64,000 bases of DNA from Macrostomum lignano (Eukaryota): assembly GCA_002269645.1 (NCBI GenBank), contig NIVC01001103.1, positions 62,001 through 126,000 of the forward strand. Direction: 5' to 3'. The notes beneath the pieces were generated by a model that ran no database searches, had not been told where the DNA came from, and saw only the letters and a list, made by a program, of their open reading frames with translations. Positions 17,499-64,000 of the stretch are shown here, one piece after another; position 1 is the stretch's first letter; every line of letters starts with the position of its first letter. The translations under genes and the position numbers were made by a program.

Positions 17499-17531
<33 letters not shown>

Positions 17532-17586: not shown

Positions 17587-17621
<35 letters not shown>

Positions 17622-32399: not shown

Positions 32400-33455
32400 A
32401 AACCCATTCAGAAAAATTATAAATGATATGAGATTATCCAAAACGCCAAGAGATTATCTTAAACCCAATGAGCTTATCCAAACCGTCATGAGATTATCCA
32501 AACCGTCATGAGTTTATCCAAACCGTCATGAGATTATGCAAAAACCAATGAGATTATACAGAACCCATTGAGATTATGCAAAACCCAATGAGATTATGCA
32601 AAACCCAATGAGATTATGCAAAACCCTATGAGATTATGCGAAACCCAATGAGATTATACAGAACCCAATGAGATTATACAAAACCCTATGAGATTATACA
32701 AAACCCAATGAGATTATCCAAAGCCCCATGGGATTATACAAAACCCAATGAGATTATGCAAAACCCAATGAGATTATGCAAAACCCTATGAGATTATGCG
32801 AAACCCAATGAGATTATACAGAACCCAATGAGATTATACAAAACCCTATGAGATTATGCAAAACCCAATGAGATTATACAAAACCCAATGAGATTATCCA
32901 ACACCCAATGAGATTATCCAACACCCAATGGGATTATCCAACACCCAATGAGATTATCCAAAACTCAATGAGATTATGCAAAACCCAATTAGATTATCCA
33001 ACACCCAATGAGATTATCCAACACACAATGAGATTATCCAAAACCCAATGAGATTATCCAACACTCAATGAGATTATCCAACACCCAATTAGATTATCCA
33101 ACACCCAATGAGATTATACAAAACCCAATAAGATTATCCAAAACCCGATGAGATTATCCAAAACGCAATGAGATAACCCAAAACCCTATGAGATTATACA
33201 AAACCCGATGAGATTATCCAACACCCAATGAGATTATCCAAAACTCAATGAGATTATCCAACACCCAATGAGATTATCCAACACCCAATGAGATTATCCA
33301 AAACCCAATGAGATTATCCAACACCCAATGAGATTATCCAACACCCAATGAGATTATCCAACACCCAATGAGATTATCCAACACCCAATGAGATTATACA
33401 AAACCCAATGAGATTATCCAAAACCTAATGAGATTATCCAAAGCCCAATGAACTT
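32400..33455. repeat. 20-bp minisatellite
   Basis: AAACCCAATGAGATTATCCA units. Confidence 0.95.
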
Positions 33456-34597
33456 ATAAAAATTCAAGATGAAAACACTTGGAATCCAGAATAAATTAAT
33501 TACTTTGCTCTCTCAAATTGAATCACAAACAACGCTGGCCAAGCATGCCATTTTATAATTAAACTCATTCAATCATTTAAACAAATCAAACAAAAGCAAA
33601 TAAGGATTTTCAAATTCAAAATGAGATCAGTAAAACAAAACAGCTGCTTTGAAATGGCGGGCGGTCATGCAACCAGCCAGCACAGGACTTGTCCAGTATG
33701 ACAACTATTTTGTACAGATACAAAAAACACTCTCGGGTATTGTTGGTGCTGCTAAATAAGCAATTCAATATGCCGCAGGTATGGCATGAGCAACTTAATC
33801 ATGGACAGATGTTTATAATTAATGAAATTGTCAAATATCCCAGGTACACACAAGAAATGCAACATCAGAAAAAATGGTTAATTTATTTATACATATGTCA
33901 TAATAAAGGTATACTATGAATAGTAAATAATACAGTAATACAGCCCAATGAGAAAATTCTTTAAACCGAATACTCCAACACTCGTTGAATAGCTCAATAC
34001 TAATTGCATACACGCATATGTATATAATAAATATTTGATTTAATGAACAGGTAAAACTACAGTTATAATTAAAACAAGAAGAAATTAAAAAAAACACTGC
34101 TTATCGAAAATCTTATAAAGCAATAAAAAAGAATCACAATTTTTGAAAACTTGCTCACTGATGCTTGCTGGTGCACAACAGAAGACACGGGAAGCGGGGG
34201 ACATAGCCGGGCATACATTGGTGTATAAATAAAGGTCTCGAGAAAAAACACACAATTCAAGAAAATAGCGCCTGAACTGAACGATCGACTTGAATGCTGC
34301 TGGTTTGCCATCATCATCCTGGTTTATTGAATGCGACCCCAACAAATTAAATAGCTAACGACTCACAGTTAGCTGTAATGATGCGCAATACACAACAGTT
34401 AGCGAAGCTGTTGAACTACGATCTATATAATAAGCGGCTTTAAATAATTCTAAGTCGGCTAATAAAGCTAGCAATGCCGATAATGATTCTTGATGCGCGT
34501 GGCGGGGGCACCGATCGAGTGTGGAGATGAGATATGCGCATGTTGTCTAACAGGTAGCACGAGCACTTTATGAACTGCAGCTTGGGTTGGGGCACAG

Positions 34598-38600: not shown

Positions 38601-40719
38601 CCCAAGATACCGGTTGCAGAACCCTACAGCACCTAAAACACCGGTTGCAGAACCCTACTCAGCACCTAAAACACCGGTTGCAGAACCCTACAGCACCCAA
38701 GACACCGGTTGCAGAACCCTACAGCACCAAAGACACCGGTTGCAGAACCCTACTAAGCACCCAAGATACCGGTTGCAGAACCCTACAGCACCAAAGACAC
38801 CGGTTGCAGAACCCTACTCAGCACCCAAGATACCGGTTGCAGAACCCTACAGCACCTAAAACACCGGTTGCAGAACCCTACTCAGCACCTAAAACACCGG
38901 TTGCAGAACCCTACTCAGCACCTAAAACTCCGGTTGCAGAACCCTACTCAGCACCTAAAACACCGGTTGCAGAACCCTACTCAGTACCCAAGATACCGGT
39001 TGCAGAACCCTACTCAGCACCAAAGACACCGGTTTCAGAACCCTACTCAGCACCCAAGATACCGGTTGCAGAACCCTACAGCACCTAAAACACCGGTTGC
39101 AGAACCCTACTCAGCACCTAAAACACCGGTTGCAGAACCCTACAGCACCCAAGACACCGGTTGCAGAACCCTACAGCACCAAAGACACCGGTTGCAGAAC
39201 CCTACTCAGCACCCAAGATACCGGTTGCAGAACCCTACAGCACCTAAAACACCGGTTGCAGAACCCTACTCAGCACCTAAAACACCGGTTGCAGAACCCT
39301 ACAGCACCCAAGACACCGGTTGCAGAACCCTACAGCACCAAAGACACCGGTTGCAGAACCCTACTCAGCACCCAAGATACCGGTTGCAGAACCCTACAGC
39401 ACCAAAGACACCGGTTGCAGAACCCTACTCAGCACCCAAGATACCGGTTGCAGAACCCTACAGCACCTAAAACACCGGTTGCAGAACCCTACTTAGCACC
39501 TAAAACACCGGTTGCAGAACCCTACTCAGCACCTAAAACTCCGGTTGCAGAACCCTACAGCACCAAAGACACCGGTTGCAGAACCCTACTCAGCACCCAA
39601 GATACCGGTTGCAGAACCCTACAGCACCAAAGACACCGGTTGCAGAACCCTACTTAGCACCTAGAACACCGGTTGCAGAACCCTACTCAGCACCAAAAAC
39701 ACCGGTTGCAGAACCCTACAGCACCTAAAACACCGGTTGCAGAACCCTACTCAGCACCTAGAACACCGGTTGCAGAACCCTAATCAGCACCAAAAACACC
39801 GGTTGCAAAACCCTACTCAGCACCTAAAACATGGGCTTGACCTGCGATTGTCATTCCGCAACTCACCGAAGCAACATCTGCACGGCACTGGTGACGGACT
39901 CAGCGCTGAGCCGGGACGCCAGCTTGCCTCTGTTGAGCAGGCCGTCCAGCAGGGGAATTCGGGCAGCCTGCTGAGTCCGCAGATGCGGCTGCACCTGTGA
40001 TTGAGTTTTCACAGTTGGAAACAAGCACGACAGGATGATGACATCGTAACGGTATAGATTTTAGCTTATTCTTGAGCATTTTCTCAATCCAAAATTCCGT
40101 CTAAAAGTCAATGAGAAAATCTTCCTCTTTGAGTTAACTTCCCGTTGGGAACTGAATCCCAGCTGAAATCTTGGGCAATCCGACCCGTGCGTGGGCCGAG
40201 TCCTAATTGAAAACCTGCCAAGTACCTGCCAGTCTGTCCAGTCCTTATCAGATTTTGCTGGATTATAAACCAAAACCTCCTTCAACTACTGTCATTCCAT
40301 GACTGCGATGGATGAACAGTTTAAGTCCGTGTTATAGTTTTTCAGCATTTACTTTTCTCGCAAGAGTCGCCCGATTGCAAAGTAATCGAGCCAACTACAA
40401 TTGTACTTCTATACCCAAAGTCATAAATTATATTTTTCGCCAATAGAGATAATGTTTTTTTATAAACTCAACGGCGAAAATAAGGCAAAACGTGCAGTAA
40501 AAATAAACAGAGAGTCGGATTCAAATGCACCCAGAGGCAGTGAGGAGCGAATATATCTATTTAGCACCTAAATATCATCTCGGGGGCCGCATCTTACGCT
40601 CAGAAACTCTCGCAAACTGACAGAATATTGCGGGTGAGAAGAGGGCGGCCACCTCCCTCCCTCTCCTCTGGCGACAATTGAGTTAGTTCGCATTGAGCAT
40701 TGTTGCTCAATCTGTGCCA

Positions 40720-40759: not shown

Positions 40760-43700
40760 CGCTCGATCTTTCGAAGAGCCGACCCTGATGAAAGAAAAGA
40801 CCCAGCGGCTGGTCCGCAGCTTCTTCATTCTTTTGATGGCGGCTTGAAATTAACTCAGCCCAACCCCCACCTGCAAAGCGCTGACAGGTGCGACAAACTG
40901 GATTTCATACAGCGAAAAATAGATTTGACAGTTTGCCCAGGCCTGGACAGACTGGGGCAGGCGGCGTGCAGCTTCTCAGATGAAGCTATTCATTTATTCA
41001 TTCATTCACACGCCGCATGCTGAGAATACTTTAATTTTTGACCCACTGACAGGCACGCGCTATAATAGTTAGAATGCTGAAATTCTCAGAGTTGCTATGC
41101 TCGTATTGTAAAAAAAATTGGACACTTCATCAGACAGACTAACTGTGCGTGAAATTAGTGATCTGGTTTAATTAAACCAGCAATACGGCTTGTTGTCTAT
41201 GGCTTACAGCAATTACAGCACTTTTCAGACCCCTTAGAGAAGTATACTACATAATAACCTCTAATTTCGTCTTCTATGGAAAAGAAAGTCCGAGGATGCA
41301 CTTTATCAGGCCGAGGCGAAGCCGGGGTCTGAGAATAGCGTCCGAGGGCTTTCTACCATAGAACACGAAACTAGTGAAACTAGAACACGACGGGAGCGGA
41401 GTGCGTTGGCGTTGCCAAGCTTGTGTATATGGTTTTGGAGGTAGACAATGATTGTCTTTAACAGTATTGACAGTATTGTCTTTTTCAACAGAAAAGAAAG
41501 GCCTCGTTAAACGATACATTATATAGTTTTAGTAAAGAAGGTTAATAAGAAAGACTATAGAATTAAAAGCAAATATTTAAATAAAACTCTGCTTCTCTTT
41601 CTTCTGCTCAGTGAGGAAGAGGAAAGGGAAGGCGCGGGTGCCGCTCGGCTGTGTGTGTGGAATTCTGCCGGCATCAACTGACACGCAATAAAACACGTCA
41701 GGTAAGGCAATACAAGGTTGGCAGTGCAATTTTACCTTAGCGTAGAGGGCCAGCAGGTCCGACAGGCTTCTGACAATTTCAGAACGGACACTGCCGGGCC
41801 AGAGAGTCGCCTGCAAGTGCAAGTGTGCGGAAGCTGAGGCTGAGTCGGGAGTTGCATGGCATAATTGAGGCGCAGGCAGAGAGGGAGAGGCTGGGGGTGA
41901 AACGGGGCCGCGGGAGACCTGATCACGTGAATGAGGGAAGGGGTTGCTTTTTACCAAACGGAGCGGGAACGCTCTTTTAGTGGTCAGTCCGTCTACCTGC
42001 CTTCCTCTCTGCACCTGCCGTAGCTATTGATTCAACACAGCCAACAGCCAGCTAAAACATGTAATTGACCCCCCCCCATAAAATGATTTGTTATTCCCAA
42101 TTGACTTGACAAGTAGCCCCATGCTATTTCTTACTTTCTACTGGCAGTAGCTGAGGAAGATATTTTCAGCAAATAAATTGAATGAAAATTTCTTATTGGC
42201 CCACCACTTACGTGGATGCAGAACGGCGCGTCGAGGCCGACAGAGCCGACGGGAGCGGAGTGCGTCGGCGTCGCCAGGCTGGCCTGACGCAGGCACAGAC
42301 CTGCGGGTTGTTGGGAGTGTCAACTACTTGAGCGCTCAGCTACTTTTTCGGTGGTACGCAGAGGGGTCCAATGGAGCCACACCAAAGGGACTGACACTGA
42401 AGTGACTGACACTGAAGTGACTGACACTGAAGTGACTGACACCGAAGGGACTGACACCGAAGTGACTGACACTGAAGTGACTGACACCGAAGGGACTGAC
42501 ACTGAAGTGACTGACACTGAAGTGACTGACACTGAAGTGACTGACACTGAAGTGACTGACACTGAAGTGACTGACACCGAAGAGACTGACACTGAAGTGA
42601 CTGACACCGAAGGGACTGAAACTGAAGTGACTGACACCGAAGGGACTGACACTGAAGTGACTGATACCGAAGGGACTGACACTGAAGTGACTGACACTGA
42701 AGTGACTGACACTGAAGTGACTGACACTGAAGTGACTGACACTGAAGTGACTGACACCGAAGAGACTGACACTGAAGTGACTGACACTGAAGTGACTGAC
42801 ACTGAAGTGACTGACACTGAAGTGACTGACACTGAAGTGACTGACACCGAAGAGACTGACACTGAAGTGACTGACACCGAAGGGACTGAAACTGAAGTGA
42901 CTGACACCGAAGGGACTGACACTGAAGTGACTGATACCGAAGGGACTGACACTGAAGTGACTGACACTGAAGTGACTGACACTGAAGTGACTGACACTGA
43001 AGTGACTGACACTGAAGTGACTGACACCGAAGAGACTGACACTGAAGTGACTGACACCGAAGGGACTGAAACTGAAGTGACTGACACCGAAGGGACTGAC
43101 ACTGAAGTGACTGATACCGAAGGGACTGACACTGAAGTGACTGACACTGAAGTGACTGACACTGAAGTGACTGACACTGAAGTGACTGACACTGAAGTGA
43201 CTGACACTGAAGTGACTGACACTGAAGTGACTGACACTGAAGTGACTGACACTGAAGGGACTGACACTGAAGTGACTGACACCGAAGGGATTGACACTGA
43301 AGTGACTGACACCGAAGGGACTGACACTGAAGTGACTGACACTGAAGTGACTGACACTGAAGTGACTGACACTGAAGTGACTGACGCTGAAGTGACTGAC
43401 GCTGAAGTGACTGACACCGAAGGGACTGACACTGAAGTGACTGACACCGAAGGGACTGACACTGAAGTGACTGACACTGAAGTGACTGACACCGAAGGGA
43501 CTGACACTGAAGGGACTGACACTGAAGTGACTGACACCGAAGTGACTGACACTGAAGTGACTGACACTGAAGCGACTGACACTGAAGTGACTGACACTGA
43601 AGTGACTGACACTGAAGTGACTGACACTGAAGTGACTGACACTGAAGGGACTGACACCGAAGGGACTGACACTGAAGTGACTGACACTGAAGTGACTGAC

Positions 43701-45457
43701 ACTGAAGTGACTGACACTGAAGTGACTGACACTGAAGTGACTGACACTGAAGTGACTGACACTGAAGGGACTGACACCGAAGGGACTGACACTGAAGTGA
43801 CTGACACTGAAGCAAAGCATTGGCCTGGCACTCCTCACCCGGATAAGCAGCAGTTCCAGTCCGTTGCTTCTTTGGTCTGCTGCCCGGCGGTCTTCTAGCT
43901 TCGACATCGAGTTCGGTGGCATCCGACAGTCGTCTCTGCCGCCAGTGCTGCATCAGAGCCGTTATCATCGGCGGCAGAGGCGGAGCCGTGCCGAGCCAAG
44001 CAGATTCATCGGCAGCGGCGGTTGTGACGGCGGTGGCAGATCGGGAGCGCAGTCGATGACCAGCCACCGTTGGCGTTGTCGACGCCGCAGCGGCCGCGCC
44101 AGACTGTCGAAGTGTACAGTCTGAACAGCAGACGGCTTCGGGGTTCGAATCCTGTTTGAAAATTAAACCGAAGTTTGACTTGATTTTGAGCTATAGAAAT
44201 ATTTTATTTGGTGACTACTGTGAGTAGTTGAAATCTACAATATTGCCAGTTTGACTAAAACTTTACCGACAATAAATCAAATAAATCAAATAAATCAAAC
44301 TTGCTGTACGACGGGAGAAATTTGCGCGATGGGAGGAATTTAACTTGATTATAGCTGCCTGCCAATAAAGGACCCTGTGCAAGTAGTGGTCTGGTTTCTA
44401 AAAAGTCTACTAACAAGTAGCAAGACAAGAATATAAGGCTAGCCAATCTTTCATAGTTTGTGTTAAGGGTTGGACACTGATAGTTAAATAAATAGAACCT
44501 ATAGAACGGGTGTGTGCCCAGGGCCGGGCCTAGATCTAAGCGACTAAGACTATCAGAAAAAGAGCGAGGACCCAGAAACCGTTTCTCCTCTATTGCTAGA
44601 AGTCCGATAATAATAAAAATAATTGATTACACCTGCCCCAATGGACAGACGTACAACCGACAGCTCAGCCGCAGCTATGGGGGGGGGGTCGCCACACACG
44701 CCCTCAGTTACCCCAGCTAATGCTGGCACCCATTTTACAGCTGGGTGAACTGAAGCAATGCAGAGTTAAGGTGACTTGCTCAAGGACACAAATTTTTCCT
44801 GAGGGATCAGGAATCGAACCCCCGACCTATCAGTCGTGCGTCTGACGCTGTAACCCCCAGAAACCGGAGCAGCTGTTAAATAGAGGGACGAACCCTAGCA
44901 AGAGCCAGCCGGCTGGCCAGGGCCCGCTGCACCGGCAGCATTCGCAGTCGGCTGGCGAACGGCAGCGCCGGCTGTCGCAGGGCCAGCGCGCCAACCAGGC
45001 AAGCGTGACGCAGGAGGCCACCGTCATTACCACCGGATGCATCGCCTGCGGCGTTAGTGGCGCGCTGAAGATCCAGCCGGGCGAGCCAGTCGGCCAGCAG
45101 GCGGCCGCAGTCTGCGTTGTCGGGCCGCACCAGAGCCAGGGCCAGCGTCAGGCGGCACAGCGCGGCATCGACGACGGCGCCGCCGCCGCTGCCACCCGCC
45201 TCGGGCTCGGTCAATCGGAGTAGCTCGGCTGGCGAGTTGACGCGAGCTTCGGCTTCGCGCAATTCAATGGTGCCGGCGCCGGCATCGGCGGCAGCTGCGG
45301 ACCAGGTGGCTAAAAACCGGAGCTCGAGAGGTGCACAATTGAGCAGCAGCGAGCTGAGCAGTTCGATGCGCTCGTGCGGCTCCAGGCGGCTGCTGAACCA
45401 ATTCAGAACAGAGTCGGGGGTCGGGTCGCTGGTGTCGTTGTTGTGACTGTTAGACAT
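34598..45457 (-). CDS. ZCCHC14: ZCCHC14/ZCCHC2-like protein (N-terminal Smaug-like domain, PX-like domain, Pro/Gln-rich region, RNA-binding SAM)
   Basis: Exon 1 NWFSSRLEPHERIELLSSLLLNCAPLELRFLAT matches the ZCCHC14 WF...R.EFL..LL..C.PLELRFL motif. Phase-consistent GT-AG exons at 44120-43839, 42300-42212, 41918-41736, 39994-39867 and 36460-36318 build a PX-like domain (LWPGSVRSEIVRS...LVELPEPVRRSADIVEFFS). SAM WLKTHRMHKY...TQGAIKK lies at ~35110-34930. The 3' exon structure is uncertain. Confidence 0.72.
38288..39826. repeat. 31/33-bp minisatellite (intronic)
   Basis: CCGGTTGCAGAACCCTAC(TC)AGCACCTAAAACA units. Confidence 0.95.
40723..40753. repeat. (GA)n microsatellite
   Basis: About 15 GA units. 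Confidence 0.9.
42389..43811. repeat. 15-bp minisatellite, ~95 copies (intronic)
   Basis: GACTGACACTGAAGT units; variant cassettes recur at 42577, 42847 and 43027. Confidence 0.95.
44678..44855 (-). mobile_element. tRNA-derived CORE-like SINE, second copy
   Basis: Reverse complement of 15871-16043 (..CAGCTGGGTGAACTGAAGCAATGCAGAGTTAAG..GCTCAAGGACAC..GGAATCGAACCCCCGACC). Confidence 0.7.
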
Positions 45458-47996: not shown

Positions 47997-50054
47997 TTGC
48001 TAGGGGAAGAATCGCGGGGAAAAACGCAGGAATTTACACACCGCACACGGATCCCTTGTGTCAGGAGGATGAAAGTTGCACCTCAAATTCTTCAAACGGT
48101 AAGCCAAAGTATTCTCTGGTATAAAGCCATTGGCGAACATATGGAAGCAGAAAAATTTGCAGTACACTTACAAACAATTCAGACATTCGATTCCACACTA
48201 ATTGATATGCACGACCTGAAGCGCATCCTGCACGAGGACGACGCGGAGTCGTTGATCGTCCAGCTCGAGCTGGCCAAGCCCCTCTCTCTGCAGCAGATTC
48301 TGCAGCTTGGTATCGAGCAGCTGGGTGATGACGCCAGCACTGCTGACTGCATCAAGTGCGGCAGGTCCGACTTCACGTCGTTCCTCATCGCTCACTCAAC
48401 CCTGCTGGAAGTGGCCGCGTGCACACTCGCTCTCAACTGTGTCACTCTCCTCATCGACGAGTTGGAGGCCGCAGCGGAGTTTGTCGCTGACGCCGACGCT
48501 GACGCCGACGCCGACGCTCTTCATCGGGCAGTCGGAGATTCAGTCGTGCCGCTGCACTGTCTCATTGTGAAGCTGTTCACACTGGGAGGAGGCGGCGGCT
48601 GCGGCGGCGGCGGCGGCGGCGGCGGCGATGCGGCATTCGAGGACCGGGCGGTGAGATTCGTGCGCCAAGTGTCGGCTGCGCGGCCTCGCTTCTTCCGCGT
48701 GTGCGCAGAGAAGGAGGCGTTCGGCCACAATGCTCTCGAGCTGGCAGTCAGTCTGCAGCTGTTCTCACTGGCTGAGTGCATTCTCGAGTCGGGCAAGTAC
48801 TGCGGCGAGGTCAGTCTCGTAGCGGGCGTCAAGGTGCAGCGAGTGGATCTGAGCGAGTACGACTTCGACACCGGGGAGCGATACAACAAGAGCCCCCTGA
48901 ACATGCTGGCAGTCACAGCAATGAGTGATCTTTCAATGCCATTAAAAAAGTTTCTCGACAATGACATTATCAAAAGATGGTCCTGCGCAACAACCGGGCG
49001 GCTAAAGAGATATATGTGTTTGAGGGCACTGATATGCACTTTATACAAGCTAGTCCTACTATTCTTTGGTTCGGCGTGCGTTTACTCGTCAATCTCTGTA
49101 AAAATCCTGGCTAACTACATGCCTGACCGCCCAGTTAACTCAAGCAGTTGCCCGCTGTTCTCGATGCACCACAATATGTCGGAATTTTGCAGCATATTTG
49201 CAGTGCGCTGCATTGTCAACGTTCTGGCATGTGGATACATCATTGAGTGCATCGTGTCGCTGGCCGTTCACCTGATCTATGTCAGGGTAGCTCAGGGCAA
49301 CAGCTCTTACTTGGCGGCGTTGGCACGCGATTTTCGATGCACCAGCCAAATTCCACTGAGAGTCTGCGCATTGAGTCTCATGGTCTGCATCGGTTTGGTT
49401 CCCGACAGGATCCAGATAGTTTCATTGTTTGACAGGGGCGCGGGACTCCGAATTCTGGATTACGCAACTGGCACGCTCTACATTATAACAATAATGACAA
49501 TAGTTTACGACTGGCTGCTGGTTATAAAAACTTTGGCTCTGCTTTGGAATATTGTTGGCATATTTTTCTTCTTTATGGCGATCATCTTCTTGGTTATCGG
49601 CCTGTTCTGCTGGCTCATCACGCTCATCGTGCCGTGCGAAATTGCCTTCGACCGCGAGATGTTCGCCAATCCGTCTTACGGCCTGTTGAACTTCTACCTG
49701 ATGGTCAGCCACGGCGGCCTGTCCCGAGAATCCGCGCAGTCTCTGGGCATCTTCTACCTGGTGACGCACGCCCTCATCGCACTGTTCTGCTTCAATTTTC
49801 TAGTCGCCTTAATGTCGGAGCGATTGTCAACCGCGTCGCGAGATCTGCCTTACATCTGCACCTCCTACAAGCTGTACATTTACCACGTCTACATGCTGTG
49901 CATTGCCTTCGTGAGCCGGCTTGTGCAGTGTAAGAGAAAAATAACAAATGCGAAAGACAACAGTCCGCTTCAGTTCTGCAGAATTTTGGAGCCACAACTC
50001 AGATTCACTGACTTAAAGGGAGCAGGACAATCCACTGCCAGCTATTTAGGTTAG
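47997..50054 (+). CDS. TRPV-like channel paralogue 3, intronless, intact (ATG candidates 48069 and 48207)
   Basis: Shared N-terminal cassette, TM helices, pore LLNFYLMVSHGGLS, S6 LFCFNFLVALMSERL. Confidence 0.75.
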   Translation: MLGEESRGKTQEFTHRTRIPCVRRMKVAPQILQTVSQSILWYKAIGEHMEAEKFAVHLQTIQTFDSTLIDMHDLKRILHEDDAESLIVQLELAKPLSLQQILQLGIEQLGDDASTADCIKCGRSDFTSFLIAHSTLLEVAACTLALNCVTLLIDELEAAAEFVADADADADADALHRAVGDSVVPLHCLIVKLFTLGGGGGCGGGGGGGGDAAFEDRAVRFVRQVSAARPRFFRVCAEKEAFGHNALELAVSLQLFSLAECILESGKYCGEVSLVAGVKVQRVDLSEYDFDTGERYNKSPLNMLAVTAMSDLSMPLKKFLDNDIIKRWSCATTGRLKRYMCLRALICTLYKLVLLFFGSACVYSSISVKILANYMPDRPVNSSSCPLFSMHHNMSEFCSIFAVRCIVNVLACGYIIECIVSLAVHLIYVRVAQGNSSYLAALARDFRCTSQIPLRVCALSLMVCIGLVPDRIQIVSLFDRGAGLRILDYATGTLYIITIMTIVYDWLLVIKTLALLWNIVGIFFFFMAIIFLVIGLFCWLITLIVPCEIAFDREMFANPSYGLLNFYLMVSHGGLSRESAQSLGIFYLVTHALIALFCFNFLVALMSERLSTASRDLPYICTSYKLYIYHVYMLCIAFVSRLVQCKRKITNAKDNSPLQFCRILEPQLRFTDLKGAGQSTASYLG

Positions 50055-50160
50055 GGTTAGAGTATAGTTTAAGTTAGGCTTCTGTTAGGGTAGGTTACGG
50101 TTAGGGTTAAATTAGGGATAGATTTGGGTTAAATTAGGTTAGGGTTTAGGTTAAGGTTAG
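50046..50160 (+). repeat. Degenerate TTAGGG-like tract
   Basis: TTAGGTTAGGGTTAG...GGTTAGGGTTAAATTAGGG...; also present at 63041-63133. Confidence 0.7.
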
Positions 50161-50922
50161 ATTCGACAGTTACTTTCAACATCTTAGCTACGATACTTTA
50201 TTCAGAGCTATACAAAGTTCTCTACCCCTATTTGAAACCGTTTTAGTCTATCAAAGCGCTTCAGTTGATCTGGAAGTTGTTTTTCTGTTTTCTGTTTATG
50301 ACTGTCCTAATATCCTGTAATAATGATTACGAGTATGCTATCCTCTGCTAGATAAGGATCGTGTTTTCGTATTCTCTTTGAAAACAGCATTCCGCTTTGG
50401 AACATTTTGCTGAGTCATGACCACTAGAATTATTGTTTTTTTTACTTCAAGCGCGAGCTTTAATAGAGAAGTATAAGTATAAGGAATAAAATAGCCGCAT
50501 TGAGTGCAAGAACTGCAAAAACAGCTGATAAAGTCGAAGCAAACTTGGCTGTTTTACCTTCCGCAACGCTGTGGGCGGGCGGGCTTACTTGAACTCAACA
50601 ACACGAGCTGCAATAATATTTACGATGCATGGCTGGGCTTAACAAAGATTGTAAACCATGTCTTTTGAGATAATATTAGTCATAATGTAAACTCTCAGCT
50701 TTAATAAAATATTGCTTTGCGGGGCATGTTCTATTTTTATACCTGTCGTAAGCGCTACTTTTTAAGGATGCACCTGAGGCCAGATAATTACAAGAGACGC
50801 AATAAAACAGATAAAAATCTCAACAAATCACGCGCCTTTGCACACACTAGTCTATAAAAGCAATAAAATTTTTGAATTAGGTAAATCATGCAATTACACC
50901 GTGAGCAGTGCAAGCAGCAAAA

Positions 50923-53900
50923 ATGCACGACACAGAGCTTCATCAAGCTTGCGACAGCGGCGACAGTGGGGCCGTAGAGCGACTGCTGAAGTCTGGCGCC
51001 GATCCGGACGCTCGGAACGCGTCGGGTCGGACGCCACTTTGGGTGGCGAGCCAGAAAGGTTTTGTGCCTGCGATGGAGCCGTTGTTTGATGCTGGAGCTC
51101 AGCTAGACTGCGCCCAGAGCGACGGAGCGACTCCACTGTTCGCGGCTGCTCAGGGTGGCTGCGACCCGGCAGTGGCGAAGCTGCTCGAGGCAGGTGCAAG
51201 TTCGGACCTCCAACGCCAGGACGGCTCCACACCGCTGCTGATTGCTGCTCAGACGGGTCACGCCAGAGTCGTTCGCTGTCTTCTCGACGCTGGAGCCGAC
51301 CCGAATCGACAAAGAAACGACGGCTCGTCGCCACTGCTCATGGCGGCTCAGTACGGTCAGCAGAGAGTGCTCGAGATGCTGCTGCAAGCTGGTGCTGATC
51401 TCCACCTGCCCAACATCTTCGGATCGGCGGCCCTGTTCGCAGCCTGCTGGTGGAATCATTTCACAGCCATTCGTCGACTGCTGCAGGTCGGCGCGGACGT
51501 GAACCTGAAGACGAACTCCAAGTGGACACCGCTGCACAAGGCTGCTCAGAAAGGCTACCTAGAGTTAGTGAGCTTCCTCATCGAGTCAGGAGCTCTTGTA
51601 AATGCTCTGGACAACGTCAGATCATCTCCACTGCACACAGCAGCTGAGAACGGACACGATGAGGTAGTGAAGTTTTTAATTGAGTCCAATGCGTCAATCA
51701 ATGCACAGGACTCGAAGGGAGACACGCCGCTCCACAGGGCAGCCAAAAAGGGCAACACTGGTGTGATACGAGTTCTGCTAGAGGCCGGTGCAGATTCCAG
51801 CTTAGAGAACAAGTCCGAGGAACTTCCGATCTGTCTGGCCGCGAGCCACTGCACACAAATGGAAGCAATCGAGCTGCTGCTTCACGCAAGCCAGCCTCAT
51901 AGCGGTCACATCGAGGCGGCAATTGCTGCCGCATGTTGCTACGGGCTCGGGAACAATGCTCTGCGACTACTCAAAAGTGTCAGAGTTGATGCAGAAGTGT
52001 TGCGGCGCATTGTCCCAAAGTCCTGCGCCAGTCTGGCGGTTCAGTGTCTGCGCCGCTTTGACAGAAGCACATCGGGAAATGTAGCATTCGGATCGACTAC
52101 TCCATCCAATTGGTAAGTTAACACCATATTAAAAATTTATGGTAAACCACATTGGTATTTACTACTTGCCAAATGATACTCTTCCACGTTAAACTCAGGC
52201 GCACTTCTTCGGAGAGCCAATTTAGCACAGAGCTGTTTGAAACTCTCGATGGCTCCGGCTTCAACAGAGTCGGTGCCCTCGGTCAGCAGGCTGAGGCAGA
52301 AATTTTGCAGCAAATCGTTCGTCACCTGAAGCCAGACACTTGCATCAATGTAGTTGGCAGCTTCAGCGAAGGATGGGGCAGCTCGTTGAAGTGTCTTAAT
52401 GGCCAGATCGACAAGGACTCCGACATCGACTTCACGGAGATCCTCGCTGACGAACTGCACATCAAAGGTCGCTGCCAATGCGAGTCACCGGATCCTCAGA
52501 AAATAGTCGAATACAAGAAAGGTTACGTTCGCTACCCCGTTGCAAGTAAGTTAAACTCGGTCGCAATTGTGCTTTCTGATTTGTAAATAGCAGTTTGACT
52601 TTGGCCCTGCAAATCCGCTTGTAAAGAAAGATCCAAATAAATAACCGTTGTATCAAATACCGAAACTGCGTTTGTTGCAGCTGCGAATCCGAGCAACCCT
52701 CAGTTCGGCACGCCCCAGTCCCCAGCCATGGACTACGTCAACGCCTTGCGAACCTGCTGCTACCCGGACATTGAGGTCCTAAGACCAGGTCGACCGACTC
52801 AAATCCAACCGCATCTGCTCAAAGCACTCACAACCGAGCTCCAGACGTCCCTGTGTCACTTGGTCAGAGCGGCACCTCCTGACAAAGAAGGCGAATGGCT
52901 CAGATTGAGCACCACCTTCCTCGAGAGGCTCATGATTCGAGGCTTCAACACACTGCAAGGCCAGCTGTTCGTCATCCTCAAGTTCCTCATCAAGCGACAT
53001 CTGTCCAAGTCAGTAAGCGGTCTCAAGACCTACGTGGCAAAGACGCTGATGTTCCGCATGATTGACGAGACTGCTGAAGACGAATGGCGTGCTGACAATC
53101 TGCTGCAGCTCACACGGCGAGCTCTGGAGATTCTGTGCGACGGTCTGCAGCATGGCGGAGAGCACGAGTGCCTGCCGCACTTCTTTGCACCTGACGCAGC
53201 CGTGTACCTGCGGAGTGGTCACTCGAAAAAGAGGGACGTAATGAAAGCAATTAAAAGCACACTGGAAAACCTGAGACAGCCTCTTGTCCAACTCATGGGA
53301 CAGCTGGTCACTACGAAAAACTCGAAATTCATGCAGTTTCACCCATTTACATTGGTGCCGGTTACATATGATCTGCACTCAGTCTGCACCGACATCAGCC
53401 TGCTGCACCTTTACCCCGTGGTGTGGACTCTGGTGCGAGATTTGGCAACCGATTCGAAACCCCCGATGCAGCTCATTAGCAGCATCCCTGACTGCGCGTT
53501 GTCAGTTCGAGAGAGCCTCAGAGCGATGGCCCAGCTGAAGACGGGTCAGCAAGAAGCTGCTTTGTACACACTGCGAGCGGCGGTTCAACACACGGTCAGC
53601 AAGGCAGTCGTCAAGAAGCAGCTCACTACTCTGTCGGATGTTACCGCGGATGTCTGGCAGCAGCTGGAGAACAGCGACTCGATCTGGCGATTCTGCTTCC
53701 GCTACGACCGACGTCCGGATCTCAAGTTCTTGCCCCGGTTCGTCAAAGACAACTTTCCCCTGGGCATGCAGATCTACGGAAACAGGTTCTACATGAACTT
53801 TAGCGCACTGCTGAAGTGCCTGTGTCTGGAGCTCATTCCGACCGACGTGAAGGACGAGTCCCGACGCTGGTTCGAGGAGACACTCGGAGACCAGGAGGCA

Positions 53901-54292
53901 GACGCGGCCGACCTCCTGCTGGCTCTGCAGTACTGCACCGACGCGGACACCCTGGCCGGCATTGTGCACCGGAACAGTGACGTCATCGCGAGTACACCAT
54001 CTATGCAGTCGAAACTCAGCGACAGCATGCTGCGACTGGTGAGTGATAGCGTATGCATCCTTGATATAAGTAGCGTTTCTCATTCCATCTTCATGATTTT
54101 AAACCGAAATAGATGGAGAAAATTGATTCATCCAACCACGGATTGTAGCCGTACCTGCACGAGAGCTGCATGCGACGGACTTTGCTGGGCTTGGCGCACC
54201 AACTGCGTCTGGAAGCAACCGCCGGAAAGTGTCGCCGTCGGCGGCGGCGCAGCGGCCGAATGCGGGAGCTGCCAGTGGCTGTGCGCACGTAG
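50923..54292 (+). CDS. Ankyrin-repeat cGAS-like receptor (ANK-Mab-21 nucleotidyltransferase), 4 exons, 1012 aa predicted
   Basis: Exons 50923-52112, 52199-52545, 52681-54038 and 54149-54292 join in frame at GT-AG sites (3039 nt). About 10 ANK repeats (TPLW, TPLF, TPLL, SPLL, TPLH...). NTase motif VVGSFSEG...DSDID, third Asp in MDYVNALRTCCYP. Mab-21 C-terminal motifs CHLV, WLRLSTTFLE, LKTYVAKT, CLPHFF. Confidence 0.85.
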
Positions 54293-57450: not shown

Positions 57451-57649
57451 CCACCAAAATCATAAAGGTGGAGAGGCATTGGTGGCGAATTTTTTGTCCC
57501 GGATTGTACTTCTGGAAAATAATTGGCAACGATTTTTGTGTAACGAAACAGCTGGCTCATGTGATACCAAATCCGTCTGAGCACTTCTATTTGCCAATAA
57601 TCGAGCTGAAGGACACGTTTCGTGTTAGGCTTTTCTTCTTTTGGCTCAC

Positions 57650-58075
57650 TGGTGCCGTATTGCCTGGTCCTGTCGTTTGCAGTGCAATCCTCCCGCGGTG
57701 TAGAGAACCATGGAGAGCGCGTAGTCTTGCCGTATTGCCTGGTCCTGCCGTTTGCAGTGTAATCCTCCTGCGGTGTAGGGAACCATGGAGAGCGCGTAGT
57801 CTTGCCGTATTGCCTGGTCCTGTAGTTTGCAGTGTAATCCTCCCGCGTTGTAGGGAACCATGGAGAGCGCGTAGTCTTGCCGTATTGCCTGGTCCTGTAG
57901 TTTGCAGTGTCATCCTCCCGCGGTGTAGGGAACCATGGAGAGCGCGTAGTCTTGCCGTATTGCCTGGTCCTGCCGTTTGCAGTGCAATCCTCCCGCGGTG
58001 TAGAGAACCATGGAGAGCGCGTAGTCTTGCCGTATCGCCTGGTCCTGTAGTTTGCAGTGTAATCCTCCCGCGGTT
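57650..58075. repeat. 75-bp tandem repeat x~5.5
   Basis: CTTGCCGTATTGCCTGGTCCTG..GGAACCATGGAGAGCGCGTAGT units. Confidence 0.9.
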
Positions 58076-58877
58076 AAGGAGTGTTAGTAGCGTCAGTGCG
58101 TCGCTTTAGGCCCTTCCTGGTCAATAAGGTTCTTAGGCGGGCACCAATGGCACCCGGGACGGGGGAACCCAGCCGTTCCAGCCCTGCGGCGGACGCGGAT
58201 GTCCTGGTGCTGGACGCCGAAGAAGAGGACCTGGACGACCTGGGCGAGGAAGCGACGACCGGCGGCATGGACTCGTTGAACACAGTGAACGTCAAACGAC
58301 GGATCGTGGCGACAGAATGTTAAGGACCCGGGCCCGGGTTCAGCCTTAGCAATTGCCGCGGAGGCGATGCAAGCGTTTCATCGAAAAGTGTTGTCGCGAG
58401 TGACCTACAACGTACCTGCCCTACACCTGACCTACAGCGCGCCAGCCGCACACCTGACCTACTGCACACCAGCCCTACATCTGACCGCCTTTGCTGAGTG
58501 CACCTGAGTTTGAATGTTAGTTTTGACTACTGTAAAATTTTTGAAGATTGCTGATTCCTTTCGCTGTTGTTGATTCTTAGAAGTTTCAATTGCTGCTGGT
58601 TTTGAGATCGTGCCGTAAGCCTGACTGAGTCTGAGATTCCTTTATTGCTGGCGTGATGCTAATTCTTAATAATTGTTTTTTTGCATAACAAAGTTAATAC
58701 AGCGTTAATTGTCATCTTTCTGCCGGTTGGCGAAGGTTCTGTTCAACGTTCGATGTCAATGTTAGATGCTCAATGGTTATGTTCCGTGTTCTATGTCAAA
58801 GTATAATGTTCAATGTAACGTTCTCCCTTTCATCCTATCATATTTTTGCGTCATCCTTCAATCCTGTGCTGTGCGAC

Positions 58878-59418
58878 AAGAGAGAGGCTGATAAGAGAGA
58901 GGACGGTAAGAGAGGAAGATAAGAGAGAGGATGATAAGAGAGGCTGGCAAGAGAGAGGCTGGTAAGAGAGAGGCTGATAAGAGAGGCTGATAAGAGAGAG
59001 GATGATAAGAGAGCCGAAAACACAGGATGATAAGAGAGAGGGTGATAAGAGAGGCTCATAGGAGAGCTGATAAGAGAGCTGATAAGAGAGGCTGATAAGA
59101 GAGGCTGATAAGAGAGGCTGATAAGAGAGAGGCTGATAAGAGAGGCTGATAAGAGAGCTGATAAGAGAGGCTGATAAGAGAGCTGATAAGAGAGCTGATA
59201 AGAGAGCTGATAAGAGAGGCTGATAAGAGAGCTGATAAGAGAGGCTGATAAGAGAGCTGATAAGAGAGGCTGATAAGAGAGGCTGATAAGAGAGCTGATA
59301 AGAGAGGCTGATAAGAGAGGCTGATAAGAGAGCTGATAAGAGAGGCTGATAAGAGAGCTGATAAGAGAGGCTGATAAGAGAGCTGATAAGAGAGGCTGAT
59401 AAGAGAGCTGATAAGAGA
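58878..59418. repeat. 13-15-bp GA-rich minisatellite
   Basis: GCTGATAAGAGAG(G) units. Confidence 0.9.
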
Positions 59419-59885
59419 TGGACTGAGGCAGACACCATAAAGTCACAGAGAGTATAGCCACGAGACAAAGTCAGAAACCCTGGTTGAGCAGTAGTGACTC
59501 ATCAGAGCTTATTATCTAGGCCCACGCAAGTGACGTCACTTTTTGGACCCCGGGCGGGCGGGGTTCGCCGGGAAGGGCTTCTTAGCTGAGGCCGGCTTCT
59601 TGCCATCCGAGCTGGCGCTGCTATTGGCGCCGCCCTGCGGCTGTTTGGCTCTGGCCAGACGGCTCTTCAGCGCGGCTTTCCGCTTCTCGAGGGCGTCAGC
59701 CTGGCGCTCTTTGGCCGCCGATACCTGCTGATCATTTTCCTGGGCCTGGGCAAGTAGCTGCCGGCTGCGCTCCTCGTGCTGCGGTGCAACGCGAGGATGT
59801 GAGATGTCGGGGGTTTAGTCGGGGTCTAGTTCGAGAGGCCAGTCAACACGCACTTTGTAGTTGGTGCTTTGGGTCTCTGTAGCAA

Positions 59886-61033: not shown

Positions 61034-62006
61034 CTAGCAATCTACGCCCCCCGTTGGGGAGCAAATAAAGAATGTAATAATTTTAATAGTGATGTAATGT
61101 AGCAAGTAATCCCCCAGATAGCAAGCATCCCCCAAACAGCAGGCATTCCTCAGACAGCAAGCATCCTCAAGACAGCAAGCATCGCCCAGACAGGAAGCAT
61201 TCCCCCAGACAGGAAGCATTCCCCAGATAGCAAGCAATCCTCCAGACAGCAAGCATTCCCCAGACAGCAAGCATCCCCCAGATAGCAAGCATCGCCCAGA
61301 CAGCAAGCATCCCCCAGACAGCAAGCATCCCCCAGACAGCAAGCATCCCCCAGATAGCAAGCATCCCCCAGACAGGAAGCATTCCCCAGACAGCAAGCAT
61401 CTCCCAGACAGCAAGCATCCCCCAGACAGCAAGCATCACTCAGACAGCAAGCATTCTTCAGACAGCAAGCATCCTCAAGACAGCAAGCATTCCCCAGACA
61501 GCAAGCATCCCCCAGATAGCAAGCATCGCCCAGACAGCAAGCATCACTCAGACAGCAAGCATTCTTCAGACAGCAAGCATCCTCAAGACAGCAAGCATTC
61601 CCCAGACAGCAAGCATCCCCCAGATAGCAAGCATCGCCCAGACAGCAAGCATCACACAGACAGCAAGCATCCCCCAGATAGCAAGCATCGCCCAAACAGG
61701 AAGGATTCCCCCAGACAGGAAGCATTCCCCAGACAGCAAGCATCCCCCAGATAGCAAGCATTCCTCATACAGTAAGCTATCCCCCAGACAGCAAGCATCC
61801 CCCAGACAGCTATGGAAAAAACCTGTTTTTCACCTTTTACAGGTACTTAACATTGATCAAAACATACCAAAAACTAATCATACCATCTCTGATAATTTCC
61901 TACAAGTTTCCTACAAGATTTTACACACCGGTCAAAAAATGGAGAAAATTGGTCAAACGGTTTGCTTTTAAACGTGTCGAACACACACACACTCACGTTT
62001 AGTATA
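61034..62006 (-). mobile_element. Non-autonomous Helitron-like element containing an 18-19-bp array
   Basis: On the minus strand the 3' end is a hairpin GCTCCCC-AAC-GGGGGGC (61046-61062), then CTAG followed by host T. The 5' end A|TATACTAAA precedes a (GT)n tract (canonical TC not seen). Internal (CAGACAGCAAGCATCCCC)n at 61105-61810. Confidence 0.6.
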
Positions 62007-62233: not shown

Positions 62234-63049
62234 TTGCTAGGGGAAGAATCGCGAGGAAAAACGCAGGGCTTTACACACCGCACATGGATCCCGTGTTCCC
62301 GTGATCCCGCGGCGTTGGCACGCGATTTTCGATGCACCAGCCAAATTCCACTGAGAGTCTGCGCATTGAGTCTCATGGTCTGCATCGGTTTGGTTCCCGA
62401 CAGGATCCAGATAGTCTCATTGTTTGACAGGGGCGCGGGACTCCGAATTCTGGATTACGCAACTGGCACGCTCTACATTATAACAATAATGAAAATAGTT
62501 TACGATTGGCTGCTGGTTATAAAAACTTTGGCTCTGCTTTGGAATATTGTTGGCATATTTTTCTTCTTTATGGCCATCATCTTCTTGGTTATCGGCCTGT
62601 TCTGCTGGCTCATCACGCTCATCGTGCCGTGCGAAATTGCCTTCGACCGCGAGATGTTCGCCAATCCGTCTTACGGCCTGTTGAACTTCTACCTGATGGT
62701 CAGCCACGGCGGCCTGTCCCGAGAATCCGCGCAGTCTCTGGGCGTCTTCTACCTGGTGACGCACGCCCTCATCGCACTGTTCTGCTTCAATTTTCTAGTC
62801 GCCTTAATGTCGGAGCGATTGTCAACCGCGTCGCGAGATCTGCCTTACATCTGCGCCTCCTACAAGCTGTACATTTACCACGTCTACATGCTGTGCATTG
62901 CCTTCGTGAGCCGGCTGGTGCAGTGTAAGAGAAAAATAACTACTGCGAAAGACAACAGTCCGCTTCAGTTCTGCAGAATTTTGGAGCCACAACTCAGATT
63001 CACCGACTTAAAGGGAGCACGACAATCCACTGCCAGCTATTTAGGTTAG
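62234..63049 (+). pseudogene. TRPV-like paralogue 4: in-frame internally deleted duplicate of paralogue 3
   Basis: Near-identical to 47997-48055 joined to 49314-50054, with a 16-bp filler at 62293-62308. Confidence 0.75.
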
Positions 63050-63899
63050 GGTTAGAGTATAGTTTAAGTTAGGCTTCTGTTAGGGTAGATTACGGTTAGG
63101 GTTAAATTAGGTTAGGGTTTAGGTTAAGGTTAGATTCGACAGTTACTTTCAACATCTTAGCTACGATACTTTATTCAGAGCTATACAAAGTTCTCTATAC
63201 CCCTATTTGAAACCGTTTTAGTCTATCAAAACGTTTCAGTTGTTCTGGAAGTTGTTTTTCTGTTTTCTGTTTATGACTGTCCTAATATCCTGTAATAATG
63301 ATTACGAGTATGCTATCCTCTGCTAGATAAGGATCGTGTTTTCGTATTCTCTTTGAAAAACAGCATTCCGCTTTGGAACATTTTGCTGAGTCATGACCAC
63401 TACAATTATTGTTTTTTTTACTTCAAGCGCGAGCTTCAATAGAGAAGTATTAAGTATAAGGAATAAAATAGCCGCCTTGAGTGCAAGAACTGCAAAAACA
63501 GCTGATAAAGTCGAAGCAAACTTAGCTGCTTTACCTTCCGCAACACTGCGGGCGGGCGAGCTTACTTGAACTCAACAACACGAGCTGCAATAATATTTAC
63601 GATGCATGGCTGGGCTTAACAAAGATTGTAAACCATGTCTTTTGAGATAATATTAGTCATAATGTAAACTCTCAGCTTTAATAAAATATTGCTTTTCGGG
63701 GCATGTTCTATTTTTATACTTGTCGTAAGCGCTTCTTTTTAAGGATGCACCTGAGGCCAGATAACTACAAGAGACGCAATAAAACAGATAAAAATCTCAA
63801 AAAATCACGCGCCTTTGCACACACTGGTCTATAAAAGTAATAAAATTTTTGAATTAGGGAAATCATGCAATTACAACGTGAGCAGTGCAAGCAGCAAAA

Positions 63900-64000
63900 A
63901 TGCACGACACAGAGCTTCATCAAGCTTGCGACAACGGCGACAGTGGGGCCGTAGAGCGACTGCTGAAGTCTGGCGCCGATCCGGACGCTCGGAACGCGTC
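63900..64000 (+). CDS. Start of second ANK-cGLR copy (runs off window)
   Basis: ATGCACGACACAGAGCTTCATCAAGC.. nearly identical to 50923-51023. Confidence 0.75.
   Translation, partial: MHDTELHQACDNGDSGAVERLLKSGADPDARNA

What the first reader, a model, noticed from the sequence alone, without database searches (positions are those of the whole stretch)
50923..54292. Intact ankyrin-cGLR with complete catalytic triad
Seen: four exons splice in frame to 1012 aa with ~10 ANK repeats, GS-x-x-EG...DSDID, a third Asp in DYVNAL, a small CQC insert, and a ~250-aa helical C-terminal extension ending in an Arg-rich tail (KCRRRRRRSGR). Known: cGAS/cGLR activity needs GS plus three acidic residues, whereas classical MAB21L proteins are degenerate at these positions. 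Inference: an active pattern-recognition enzyme whose ANK array may sense a protein ligand rather than dsDNA or dsRNA.
Basis: partly seen in the sequence, partly recalled or inferred. Interest (0 to 1): 0.7.

Follow-up and report, generated by a model that had tools for sequence, protein, structure and literature searches.

The report
Flatworm ankyrin-fused cGAS-like receptor gene
This is an intact gene of the flatworm Macrostomum lignano for an ankyrin-repeat protein fused to a cGAS-like enzyme with its catalytic residues in place, one of dozens of such genes in this species and of a type already catalogued in 2023, so it is a sound but not new kind of innate-immune sensor candidate.

Summary
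Four exons (50923-52112, 52199-52545, 52681-54038, 54149-54292, + strand, GT/AG introns) splice to 1012 aa. A 1012-aa Macrostomum lignano protein in the database differs from it at 7 residues.

The protein has four parts:
- ten ankyrin repeats;
- a cGAS/Mab21-fold nucleotidyltransferase. Foldseek top hits are all cGAS, MAB21L1, MB21D2 or Sp-cGLR1, and a family profile matches cGAS at E 3.6e-8;
- a conserved ~240-aa C-terminal domain with no match in PDB or BFVD;
- a 47-aa Arg-rich tail that is not conserved.

G450-S451, D472, D474 and D530 are kept in 83-92 of 100 relatives. D470 varies, so the acidic triad is D472/D474/D530.

The gene belongs to a Macrostomum-specific expansion: 86 clusters at 50% identity score E<=1e-30, and all 16 sampled clusters that carry a name are M. 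lignano. The nearest outgroups are bivalve and brachiopod cGLR-like proteins without ankyrin repeats.

Li et al. 2023 already reported ANK-cGLR fusions and put five M. lignano relatives (31-37% identical) into their 140-enzyme screen. None was among the 15 actives they took forward.

Enzyme activity, the ligand, and a protein-sensing role for the ankyrin array remain inferences. I could not determine whether M. lignano has STING. Verdict: a real gene, and a new member of a known kind.

The parts
50923..52112 (+). Exon 1 (aa 1-397): start codon, ten ankyrin repeats plus cap (aa 1-352, window 50923-51978), and the start of the linker
   Evidence: Splice model; Pfam Ank E 2.6e-61, 8 stretches; coordinates
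52199..52545 (+). Exon 2 (aa 398-512): N-terminal spine helices and first half of the nucleotidyltransferase lobe. Holds G450-S451 (52356-52361), D470-S-D472-I-D474 (52416-52430) and H484-x4-C489-x-C491 (52458-52481)
   Evidence: conservation G450 90, S451 89, D472 92, D474 90 of 100 sequences; H/C motif
52681..54038 (+). Exon 3 (aa 513-965): third catalytic Asp D530 (52731-52733), the WLRLSTTFLE motif (52896-52925), the Mab-21_C helical lobe (aa 609-688, 52968-53207), and the conserved orphan C-terminal domain (aa ~726-965, 53319-54038)
   Evidence: Pfam Mab-21_C 24.3 bits against a cutoff of 24.1, and found in all 8 paralogues. 8gjw_A alignment of D530. Profile against cGAS E 3.6e-8. C-terminal domain model pLDDT 82.3, with no PDB or BFVD match
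54149..54292 (+). Exon 4 (aa 966-1012 plus stop): non-conserved basic tail, with KCRRRRRRSGR at 54227-54259
   Evidence: the acceptors at 54149 and 54164 are the only in-frame ones that give this 47-52-aa tail; 54149 is the one that matches P0001. pLDDT <50. Absent in paralogues. Read in another frame in P0002 and P0003. pI 11.9
63900..63998 (+). Start of a second, tandemly duplicated copy of the same gene (aa 1-33, 97% identical), cut off by the end of the window
   Evidence: tblastn; the segment 49314-51023 matches 62309-64000 at 96.6% identity

Best explanation
This is a real, intact, cytosolic-type protein gene of the free-living flatworm Macrostomum lignano.

Architecture: ten ankyrin repeats; a linker; a cGAS-like receptor (cGLR) nucleotidyltransferase of the Mab21 fold; a family-specific C-terminal domain of about 240 aa; and a short, labile basic tail.

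Shown:
- the gene model;
- the domain identities;
- the cGAS-like fold;
- the presence and family-wide conservation of G450-S451, D472, D474 and D530;
- membership of a large Macrostomum-specific expansion of ANK-cGLR genes.

Inferred:
- Like other cGLRs, the protein rests in an inactive state.
- On binding a ligand, it uses the GS loop and the three Asp residues to coordinate Mg2+/Mn2+ and two NTPs, and makes a cyclic di- or oligonucleotide second messenger.
- The variable ankyrin array, the conserved C-terminal domain, or both act as the ligand-sensing or regulatory modules.
- The signal is read by a downstream receptor (STING or another) that I could not identify.
For: Gene model and database counterpart. 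Conserved intron position in a paralogue.

Domain identities: Pfam Ank and Mab-21_C.

Sequence match to solved structures: a match to the solved cGLR 8gjw_A (E 3.6e-4) aligns MDYVNAL with VDLVPAI. The family profile matches cGAS chains at E 3.6e-8. hhalign pairs EWLRLSTTFLER with the cGAS stretch ETWRLSFSHIEK.

Structure: the AF2 model has pLDDT 78.7 and pTM 0.78, with the order beta1-GS-helix-beta2(DxD)-...-beta(D530). All 50 Foldseek PDB hits at E<=1e-3 are cGAS, MAB21L1, MB21D2 or Sp-cGLR1 (best 4k97_A, E 6.4e-6, TM 0.54 on the target).

Catalytic columns: kept in 83-92 of 100 relatives, including bivalve and brachiopod proteins.

Family size and distribution: 1405 hits, 86 at E<=1e-30. All 16 sampled close clusters that carry a name are M. 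lignano. Outgroups are Mercenaria, Sinanodonta and Lingula, without ANK motifs.

Literature: Li et al. 2023 classify M. lignano relatives as cGLRs and report ANK-cGLR fusions.
Against: There is no biochemical evidence for any member.

Five M. lignano relatives were in the Li et al. screen, and none is labelled among the 15 actives characterised.

Pfam's Mab-21 N-terminal (NTase) model does not detect the N-lobe, so the N-lobe assignment rests on motifs and on a predicted structure.

Only one of the five AF2 models of the 615-aa construct reached pLDDT 78.7; the others reached 55-61.

The loop between GS and DxD is modelled at pLDDT <50.

Asp-Asp distances could not be measured.

Other flatworms examined lack both cGLR and STING. 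My two STING searches did not resolve whether M. lignano has one.
Confidence: 0.6

Rival explanations
1. It is a conventional nucleic-acid-activated cGLR. dsRNA or dsDNA binds the basic surface of the core, as in cGAS or Sp-cGLR1. The ankyrin array serves only for localisation or for recruiting downstream partners, not for sensing.
For: The core alone is mildly basic (pI 8.3; family median about 8.1), whereas the ANK array (5.7) and the C-terminal domain (6.0) are acidic. Li et al. link a higher pI to nucleic-acid sensing. Most characterised cGLRs sense dsDNA or dsRNA.
Against: Five core-plus-C-terminal constructs of M. lignano relatives were assayed with poly I:C and 45-bp dsDNA. None is labelled among the 15 actives. 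ANK repeat number varies widely between paralogues, as expected of a recognition module.
Confidence: 0.2
2. It is a catalytically silent Mab21-type scaffold. It binds a nucleotide, as MAB21L1 binds CTP, but makes no messenger and works through protein-protein contacts of the ankyrin and C-terminal domains.
For: MAB21L1 structures score nearly as well as cGAS in Foldseek. No activity has been reported for any M. lignano member. At least one paralogue (P0015) has lost the motif (DSNVN, third-Asp segment deleted), so loss of catalysis is tolerated in the family.
Against: GS, D472, D474 and D530 are kept in 83-92 of 100 relatives over 20-45% overall identity. This is hard to explain without selection for catalysis. 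Classical MAB21L proteins lack a functional active site.
Confidence: 0.12
3. It is an active nucleotidyltransferase, but its product or pathway is not cGLR-STING-like. It might make linear 2'-5' oligonucleotides in the manner of OAS, or a messenger read by the fused C-terminal domain or by a non-STING receptor.
For: The flatworms examined so far lack STING. The family carries a conserved extra domain with no known structural relative. Li et al. found cGLR products that matched no known messenger.
Against: The fold matches are to cGAS and Mab21, not to OAS. There is no evidence on the product at all. The STING status of M. lignano is unknown.
Confidence: 0.15
4. It is a recently duplicated, decaying or untranscribed copy, an open reading frame kept only because of its youth.
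For: The locus lies in a segmental duplication. Sister copies P0002 and P0003 differ by internal deletions and a frame change in the last exon. The genome is repeat-rich.
Against: There is an uninterrupted 1012-codon frame across four exons with canonical splice sites. There are only 7 amino-acid differences from P0001, and all catalytic and invariant family residues are intact.
Confidence: 0.05

Closest known systems
Macrostomum lignano cGLRs in the Li et al. 2023 screen (PAA86972, PAA45980, PAA57558, PAA93208, PAA68676; PMC9980059, Table S3 rows 89-93)
   Same: Same species and same family. They share the motifs GS-x-x-EGWG, SDID, H...C.C...GH, LRVSTxxLE, QGQLF..K.LIK, GLKTYHAKT and CMPHFF, and the FHPF start of the C-terminal domain. 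Two of them lie in clusters found here (P0044, P0062).
   Different: They are only 31-37% identical to the window protein over the core. The window gene itself was not tested. The screened constructs started just before the core, so they lacked the ankyrin array.
ANK-cGLR fusions of other animals, for example in the coral Stylophora pistillata (Li et al. 2023, Fig. 1C, 4C, S2A, Table S2)
   Same: Ankyrin repeats fused to a cGLR nucleotidyltransferase core, proposed to act in ligand or protein interaction.
   Different: The fusion probably arose independently. The nearest non-Macrostomum relatives found here (bivalves, brachiopod) have no ANK motifs. The coral proteins are not known to carry the C-terminal domain. 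No function is known for either.
cGAS (human, mouse; e.g. PDB 4K97, 6CT9)
   Same: Bilobal Mab21 fold. GS loop, acidic pair on beta2, third acid on a later strand. The WRLS-x-x-x-E motif and the C-lobe helices are shared.
   Different: 13-16% identity. There is no basic N-terminal DNA-binding tail. The cGAS zinc thumb has no equivalent at its position; instead an H/C/C/H motif lies between beta2 and beta3. The ankyrin array and a 240-aa domain are added. The ligand is unknown.
Invertebrate cGLR1 structures 8GJW and 8GJY (Sp-cGLR1)
   Same: Direct sequence match from the third-Asp strand through the C-lobe (8gjw_A E 3.6e-4; 8gjy profile E 1.3e-6).
   Different: These are single-domain, nucleic-acid-activated enzymes (Sp-cGLR1 responds to dsRNA). 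The N-lobe of the window protein is too divergent to align by sequence.
MAB21L1 (PDB 5EOG, 5EOM)
   Same: Same fold, with similar Foldseek scores.
   Different: MAB21L1/2/3 lack a predicted functional active site. The window protein has the full GS/D/D/D set.

Membership tests
cGAS-like receptors (cGLR, Mab21 superfamily) | Bilobal Mab21 fold: pol-beta-type NTase N-lobe plus helical C-lobe | tested here: met
   Foldseek: all 50 hits at E<=1e-3 are cGAS, MAB21L1, MB21D2 or cGLR, TM about 0.54 on the target. Pfam Mab-21_C found in all 8 paralogues. Family profile against cGAS E 3.6e-8.
cGAS-like receptors (cGLR, Mab21 superfamily) | Catalytic motif: h[G/S]S, then [D/E]h[D/E]h, then a third h[D/E]h acid | tested here: met
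   VVG450-S451; D472-I-D474-F; M-D530-Y. These are conserved in 83-92 of 100 relatives and share alignment columns with bivalve and brachiopod relatives. D530 aligns with VDLVPAI of 8gjw_A.
cGAS-like receptors (cGLR, Mab21 superfamily) | The three acidic residues converge on one metal-binding site in 3D | tested here: inconclusive
   In the model each acid sits at the N-terminal tip of a beta-strand, in the cGAS order. No coordinates are returned, so no distances could be measured. The loop aa 460-471 has pLDDT <50.
cGAS-like receptors (cGLR, Mab21 superfamily) | Ligand-dependent synthesis of a nucleotide second messenger | not testable with these tools
   Needs biochemistry. Relatives screened by Li et al. 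are not among the 15 labelled actives.
cGAS-like receptors (cGLR, Mab21 superfamily) | A cognate receptor (STING) encoded in the same genome | tested here: inconclusive
   Two word-index searches with STING queries listed only the 120 best hits (vertebrate, coral, hemichordate), so weak hits could not be inspected. M. lignano is not in Li et al. Table S5. Other flatworms have none.
Ankyrin-repeat proteins | Tandem 33-residue ANK repeats | tested here: met
   Pfam Ank E 2.6e-61 and Ank_2 E 1.7e-60. Ten repeats can be read in aa 1-329.
Classical MAB21L1/2/3 developmental proteins | Degenerate active site (catalytic acids missing) | tested here: not met
   The window protein keeps the GS motif and all three Asp, so it is not of the MAB21L type.
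Bacterial CD-NTases (CBASS) | Match to CD-NTase defence-system profiles | tested here: not met
   No PADLOC hit for the core or the C-terminal domain at E<=1.

The most novel reading that the evidence does not exclude
Macrostomum lignano, an early-branching member of a phylum that otherwise lost cGLR and STING, has built a very large, diversifying receptor family. It has at least 86 clusters at 50% identity, and ankyrin arrays in proteins that range from a few hundred to more than 3000 residues.

In this reading, the conserved C-terminal domain, which has no known structural relative, is an integral output or oligomerisation module. The family would then signal without STING, through a new cGLR pathway architecture. 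The ankyrin arrays would recognise pathogen proteins rather than nucleic acids.
Probability: 0.15. Interest if true: 0.75.

Novelty: new member of a known kind. Interest (0 to 1): 0.35.

Why it matters
cGLRs are a major family of animal pattern-recognition receptors, and most of them have no known ligand. ANK-fused cGLRs are the obvious candidates for sensing something other than nucleic acids.

M. lignano is a tractable laboratory flatworm, which would make ligand and pathway discovery feasible there. It carries dozens of such genes, while the other flatworms examined have none.

Three details found here might help the design of constructs:
- the true catalytic triad is D472/D474/D530;
- the family shares an H/C/C/H motif;
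- the family shares a confidently modelled C-terminal domain with no match in PDB or BFVD.

The screened constructs of Li et al. lacked the ankyrin array, which may explain why none was reported active.

As a discovery, however, the class and the species' repertoire are already published.

Tried and rejected
I used the 99%-identical P0001 core instead.

The N-lobe cannot be aligned to cGAS by sequence.

3. Pfam at E<=1 gave no Mab-21 N-terminal hit in any of 8 paralogues.

4. Searches for the C-terminal domain found nothing:
- Foldseek against PDB, best E 1.1; the TRIF N-terminal domain and TPR-like hits are not significant;
- Foldseek against BFVD, best E 1.3;
- PADLOC, no hit;
- NCBIfam, no hit;
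- the weak Pfam HTH_WhiA, DUF6779 and SLATT_3 hits are at chance level.

5. Two searches for STING in M. lignano were uninformative, because only the best 120 hits are listed. Literature searches gave no statement on M. lignano STING.

6. The look-up of encoding contigs had no record for P0001.

7. The idea that CQC corresponds to the cGAS zinc thumb was rejected. It lies between beta2 and beta3 of the N-lobe, not after the third Asp.

8. The idea that the Arg-rich tail is a conserved functional element was rejected.
Full report
**Observation**

The exons are 50923-52112, 52199-52545, 52681-54038 and 54149-54292 on the + strand. Each intron starts with GT and ends with AG. The exons join to 3039 nt and 1012 codons, ending in TAG.

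Among the possible acceptors for the last exon, only 54149 and 54164 are in frame and give this 47-52-aa tail. 54149 is the one that matches P0001.

A search of the protein collection returned a 1012-aa protein (P0001) that differs at 7 residues. It also returned a set of paralogues, all named Macrostomum lignano. The window therefore comes from this free-living flatworm, and an independent annotation reached the same length.

In a 36%-identical paralogue (P0005, contig NIVC01002284.1) an intron lies at the position of window intron 2, between ...PGYA and SSPATP. The exon 2/3 junction is therefore old.

**Domains**

Pfam finds ankyrin repeats in 8 stretches (E 2.6e-61). It also finds Mab-21_C at aa 609-688, just above its cutoff (24.3 against 24.1 bits). 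The same model hits all eight paralogues tested, with a best E of 1.4e-7. Ten 33-residue repeats can be read in aa 1-329.

A phmmer search of PDB sequences with aa 398-1012 hit a solved cGAS-like receptor 1 (8gjw_A, E 3.6e-4). The alignment pairs MDYVNAL with VDLVPAI, the strand that carries the third catalytic acid. A profile of eight family members hit cGAS chains at E 3.6e-8 and Sp-cGLR1 (8gjy) at 1.3e-6, in the C-lobe. hhalign against human cGAS aligned only the C-lobe, including EWLRLSTTFLER with ETWRLSFSHIEK.

**Structure**

The best model has pLDDT 78.7 and pTM 0.78. The other four models reach only 55-61.

The order of elements is the pol-beta NTase order seen in cGAS:
- two long N-terminal helices;
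- beta1, followed at once by G450-S451;
- a poorly modelled loop;
- beta2 beginning at D474, with D472 just before it;
- a hairpin;
- a strand beginning at D530;
- the helical lobe.

Foldseek against the PDB gave 50 hits at E<=1e-3. All of them are cGAS, MAB21L1, MB21D2 or Sp-cGLR1. The best is 4k97_A (E 6.4e-6, about 370 aligned columns, TM 0.54 on the target).

The tools return no coordinates.

**Catalytic residues**

I aligned 100 sequences: 76 close family representatives and 24 distant ones. Counts out of 100 are G450 90, S451 89, D472 92, D474 90 and D530 83. D470 is D in only 37, and otherwise E, G, N or a gap.

The acidic triad is therefore D472/D474/D530, not the first two Asp of DSDID. 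The distant sequences share these columns. They come from the bivalves Mercenaria and Sinanodonta and the brachiopod Lingula.

One paralogue, P0015, has DSNVN and lacks the third-Asp segment. Its relative P0016 is joined to B-box and Tudor domains.

**Family-specific features**

CQC is part of a motif H484-x4-C489-x-C491-x14-H506. Among the 76 close relatives, H484 is kept in 63, C489 in 69, C491 in 48 and H506 in 53. The column of C491 is a gap in all 24 distant relatives. The window protein has Tyr at position 506. The motif lies between beta2 and beta3, so it is not the cGAS zinc thumb. A small metal site is possible but untested.

After the Mab21 C-lobe comes a domain of about 240 aa (aa ~726-965). 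All paralogues share it, with invariant positions that include HPF, FCF, NF and a late W and D.

Modelled alone with 17 sequences, this domain is confident: pLDDT 82.3, pTM 0.83, and all five models at 79-82. It is mostly helical with two to three short strands.

It has no significant match anywhere I looked:
- PDB, best E 1.1;
- BFVD, best E 1.3;
- Pfam, PADLOC and NCBIfam.

In the exhaustive profile search, matches to this part of the profile appear only in the close family.

The last 47 aa, encoded by exon 4, are a different matter. Their pLDDT is below 50 and they are absent from paralogues. In the near-identical copies P0002 and P0003 the same DNA is read in another frame. The Arg run is encoded by a GC-rich simple stretch. 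I do not treat it as a functional element.

**Family size and distribution**

The profile search of 1.84 billion representatives found 1405 proteins at E<=1e-3 and 86 at E<=1e-30. I sampled 17 of the close group. The 16 that carry a name are all M. lignano, many of them annotated as ANK_REP_REGION proteins, and they range up to 3379 aa.

A crude motif count finds three or more ANK-like motifs in at least 33 of the 76 close representatives, many of which are fragments. It finds none in the 24 distant ones. In this clade, therefore, the ankyrin fusion and the C-terminal domain are Macrostomum-lineage features.

**What is already known**

Li et al. 2023 (PMC9980059; published in Cell) surveyed about 3000 cGLRs. 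They state that 87% are single-domain. Some carry TPR or ankyrin repeats, and nematodes and 'most platyhelminthes' encode none apart from Mab21-like proteins.

Their Table S3 lists five M. lignano proteins (rows 89-93) among the 140 enzymes cloned. These were cloned as N-terminally trimmed constructs without the ankyrin array. The column that names the 15 actives is empty for these five rows. The assay used poly I:C and a 45-bp dsDNA. The authors note that many cGLRs look inactive in vitro, probably because their ligand is unknown.

The window core is 31-37% identical to those five proteins. Planarians and cestodes lack both cGAS/cGLR and STING.

**Mechanism**

The best-supported reading is a ligand-gated nucleotidyltransferase of the cGLR type. 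Fold, motifs and conservation are shown. Catalysis, product, ligand and receptor are inferred.

Domain charges are as follows:

| Segment | pI |
|---|---|
| Ankyrin array | 5.7 |
| cGLR core | 8.3 |
| C-terminal domain | 6.0 |

This leaves room for a nucleic-acid ligand on the core, so I keep that as a rival.

A silent scaffold is less likely, given the conservation of four catalytic positions at 20-45% overall identity. A decaying duplicate is unlikely, given the intact frame and motifs.

**STING**

I could not settle whether M. lignano has STING. Two searches with STING queries listed only the 120 strongest hits, all vertebrate, coral or hemichordate. The papers I found say nothing on this species.

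**Context**

The gene sits in a segmental duplication. Window 49314-51023 matches 62309-64000 at 96.6% identity, so a second copy of the gene starts at 63900 and runs off the window. Neighbouring ORFs are unrelated to immunity.

**Verdict**

The gene is a new member of a known kind. The points not yet in the literature I could search are the orphan C-terminal domain, the H/C/C/H motif and the scale of the Macrostomum expansion.

Noticed in passing
window 49314-51023 and 62309-64000: Segmental duplication at 96.6% identity over 1714 bp, with an offset of about 12,995 bp. It carries the 3' part of the upstream long ORF, the intergenic region and the first 100 nt of the ANK-cGLR gene. A second copy of the gene therefore starts at 63900 and is cut by the window end.
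   Followed up: partly
window 1971-2732, 21137-21888, 48204-48924: A module of about 750 bp is repeated three times at 94-95% identity. Each copy forms the start of a long ORF (1938-2645, 21139-22974, 47997-50054). None has a Pfam hit. The 685-aa ORF at 47997-50054 has a hydrophobic, multi-pass-like C-terminal half.
   Followed up: partly
window 16194-17786 (+): A 530-aa ORF with two GRF zinc fingers (E 2.4e-34) and a topoisomerase C4 zinc ribbon. It looks like the C-terminal part of a topoisomerase III-alpha-type gene.
   Followed up: no
window 13233-13855, 14471-15170, 19786-20378, 23155-23705, 24359-25271, 25800-28385, 31042-31619, 32427-33467, 38288-39831, 42379-43812, 58875-59426, 61100-61810: There are many tandem satellite-like arrays, with copies 77-99% alike. 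Several create long spurious ORFs on both strands. For example, the ORF at 42340-44067 (-) has a low-complexity 'PMG' Pfam hit.
   Followed up: no
paralogues P0015 and P0016 (M. lignano, not in the window): One branch of the family has lost the catalytic motif (DSNVN, third-Asp segment deleted). In one gene model (P0016) this branch is joined to B-box and Tudor domains. This suggests non-catalytic offshoots of the family.
   Followed up: partly
window 54149-54292 compared with P0002 and P0003: Near-identical sister copies read the last exon in a different frame after ...MRRTLLG. The Arg-rich tail of the window copy is therefore replaced by ...APTASGSNRRKVSPS... in them. The C-terminus is evolutionarily labile, or some copies are mis-assembled.
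   Followed up: partly
locus L001 8293-10000 (M. lignano NIVC01002284.1): Upstream of the annotated start of paralogue P0005 there are about 1.7 kb of further in-frame ankyrin-repeat coding sequence. That gene model is therefore probably 5'-truncated, and ankyrin arrays in the family may be longer than annotated.
   Followed up: no
window 57468-58109 (+): An ORF with a sub-threshold Frizzled (Fz) cysteine-rich-domain hit (27.3 bits against a cutoff of 32.1). It overlaps a short internal repeat at 57653-58074.
   Followed up: no
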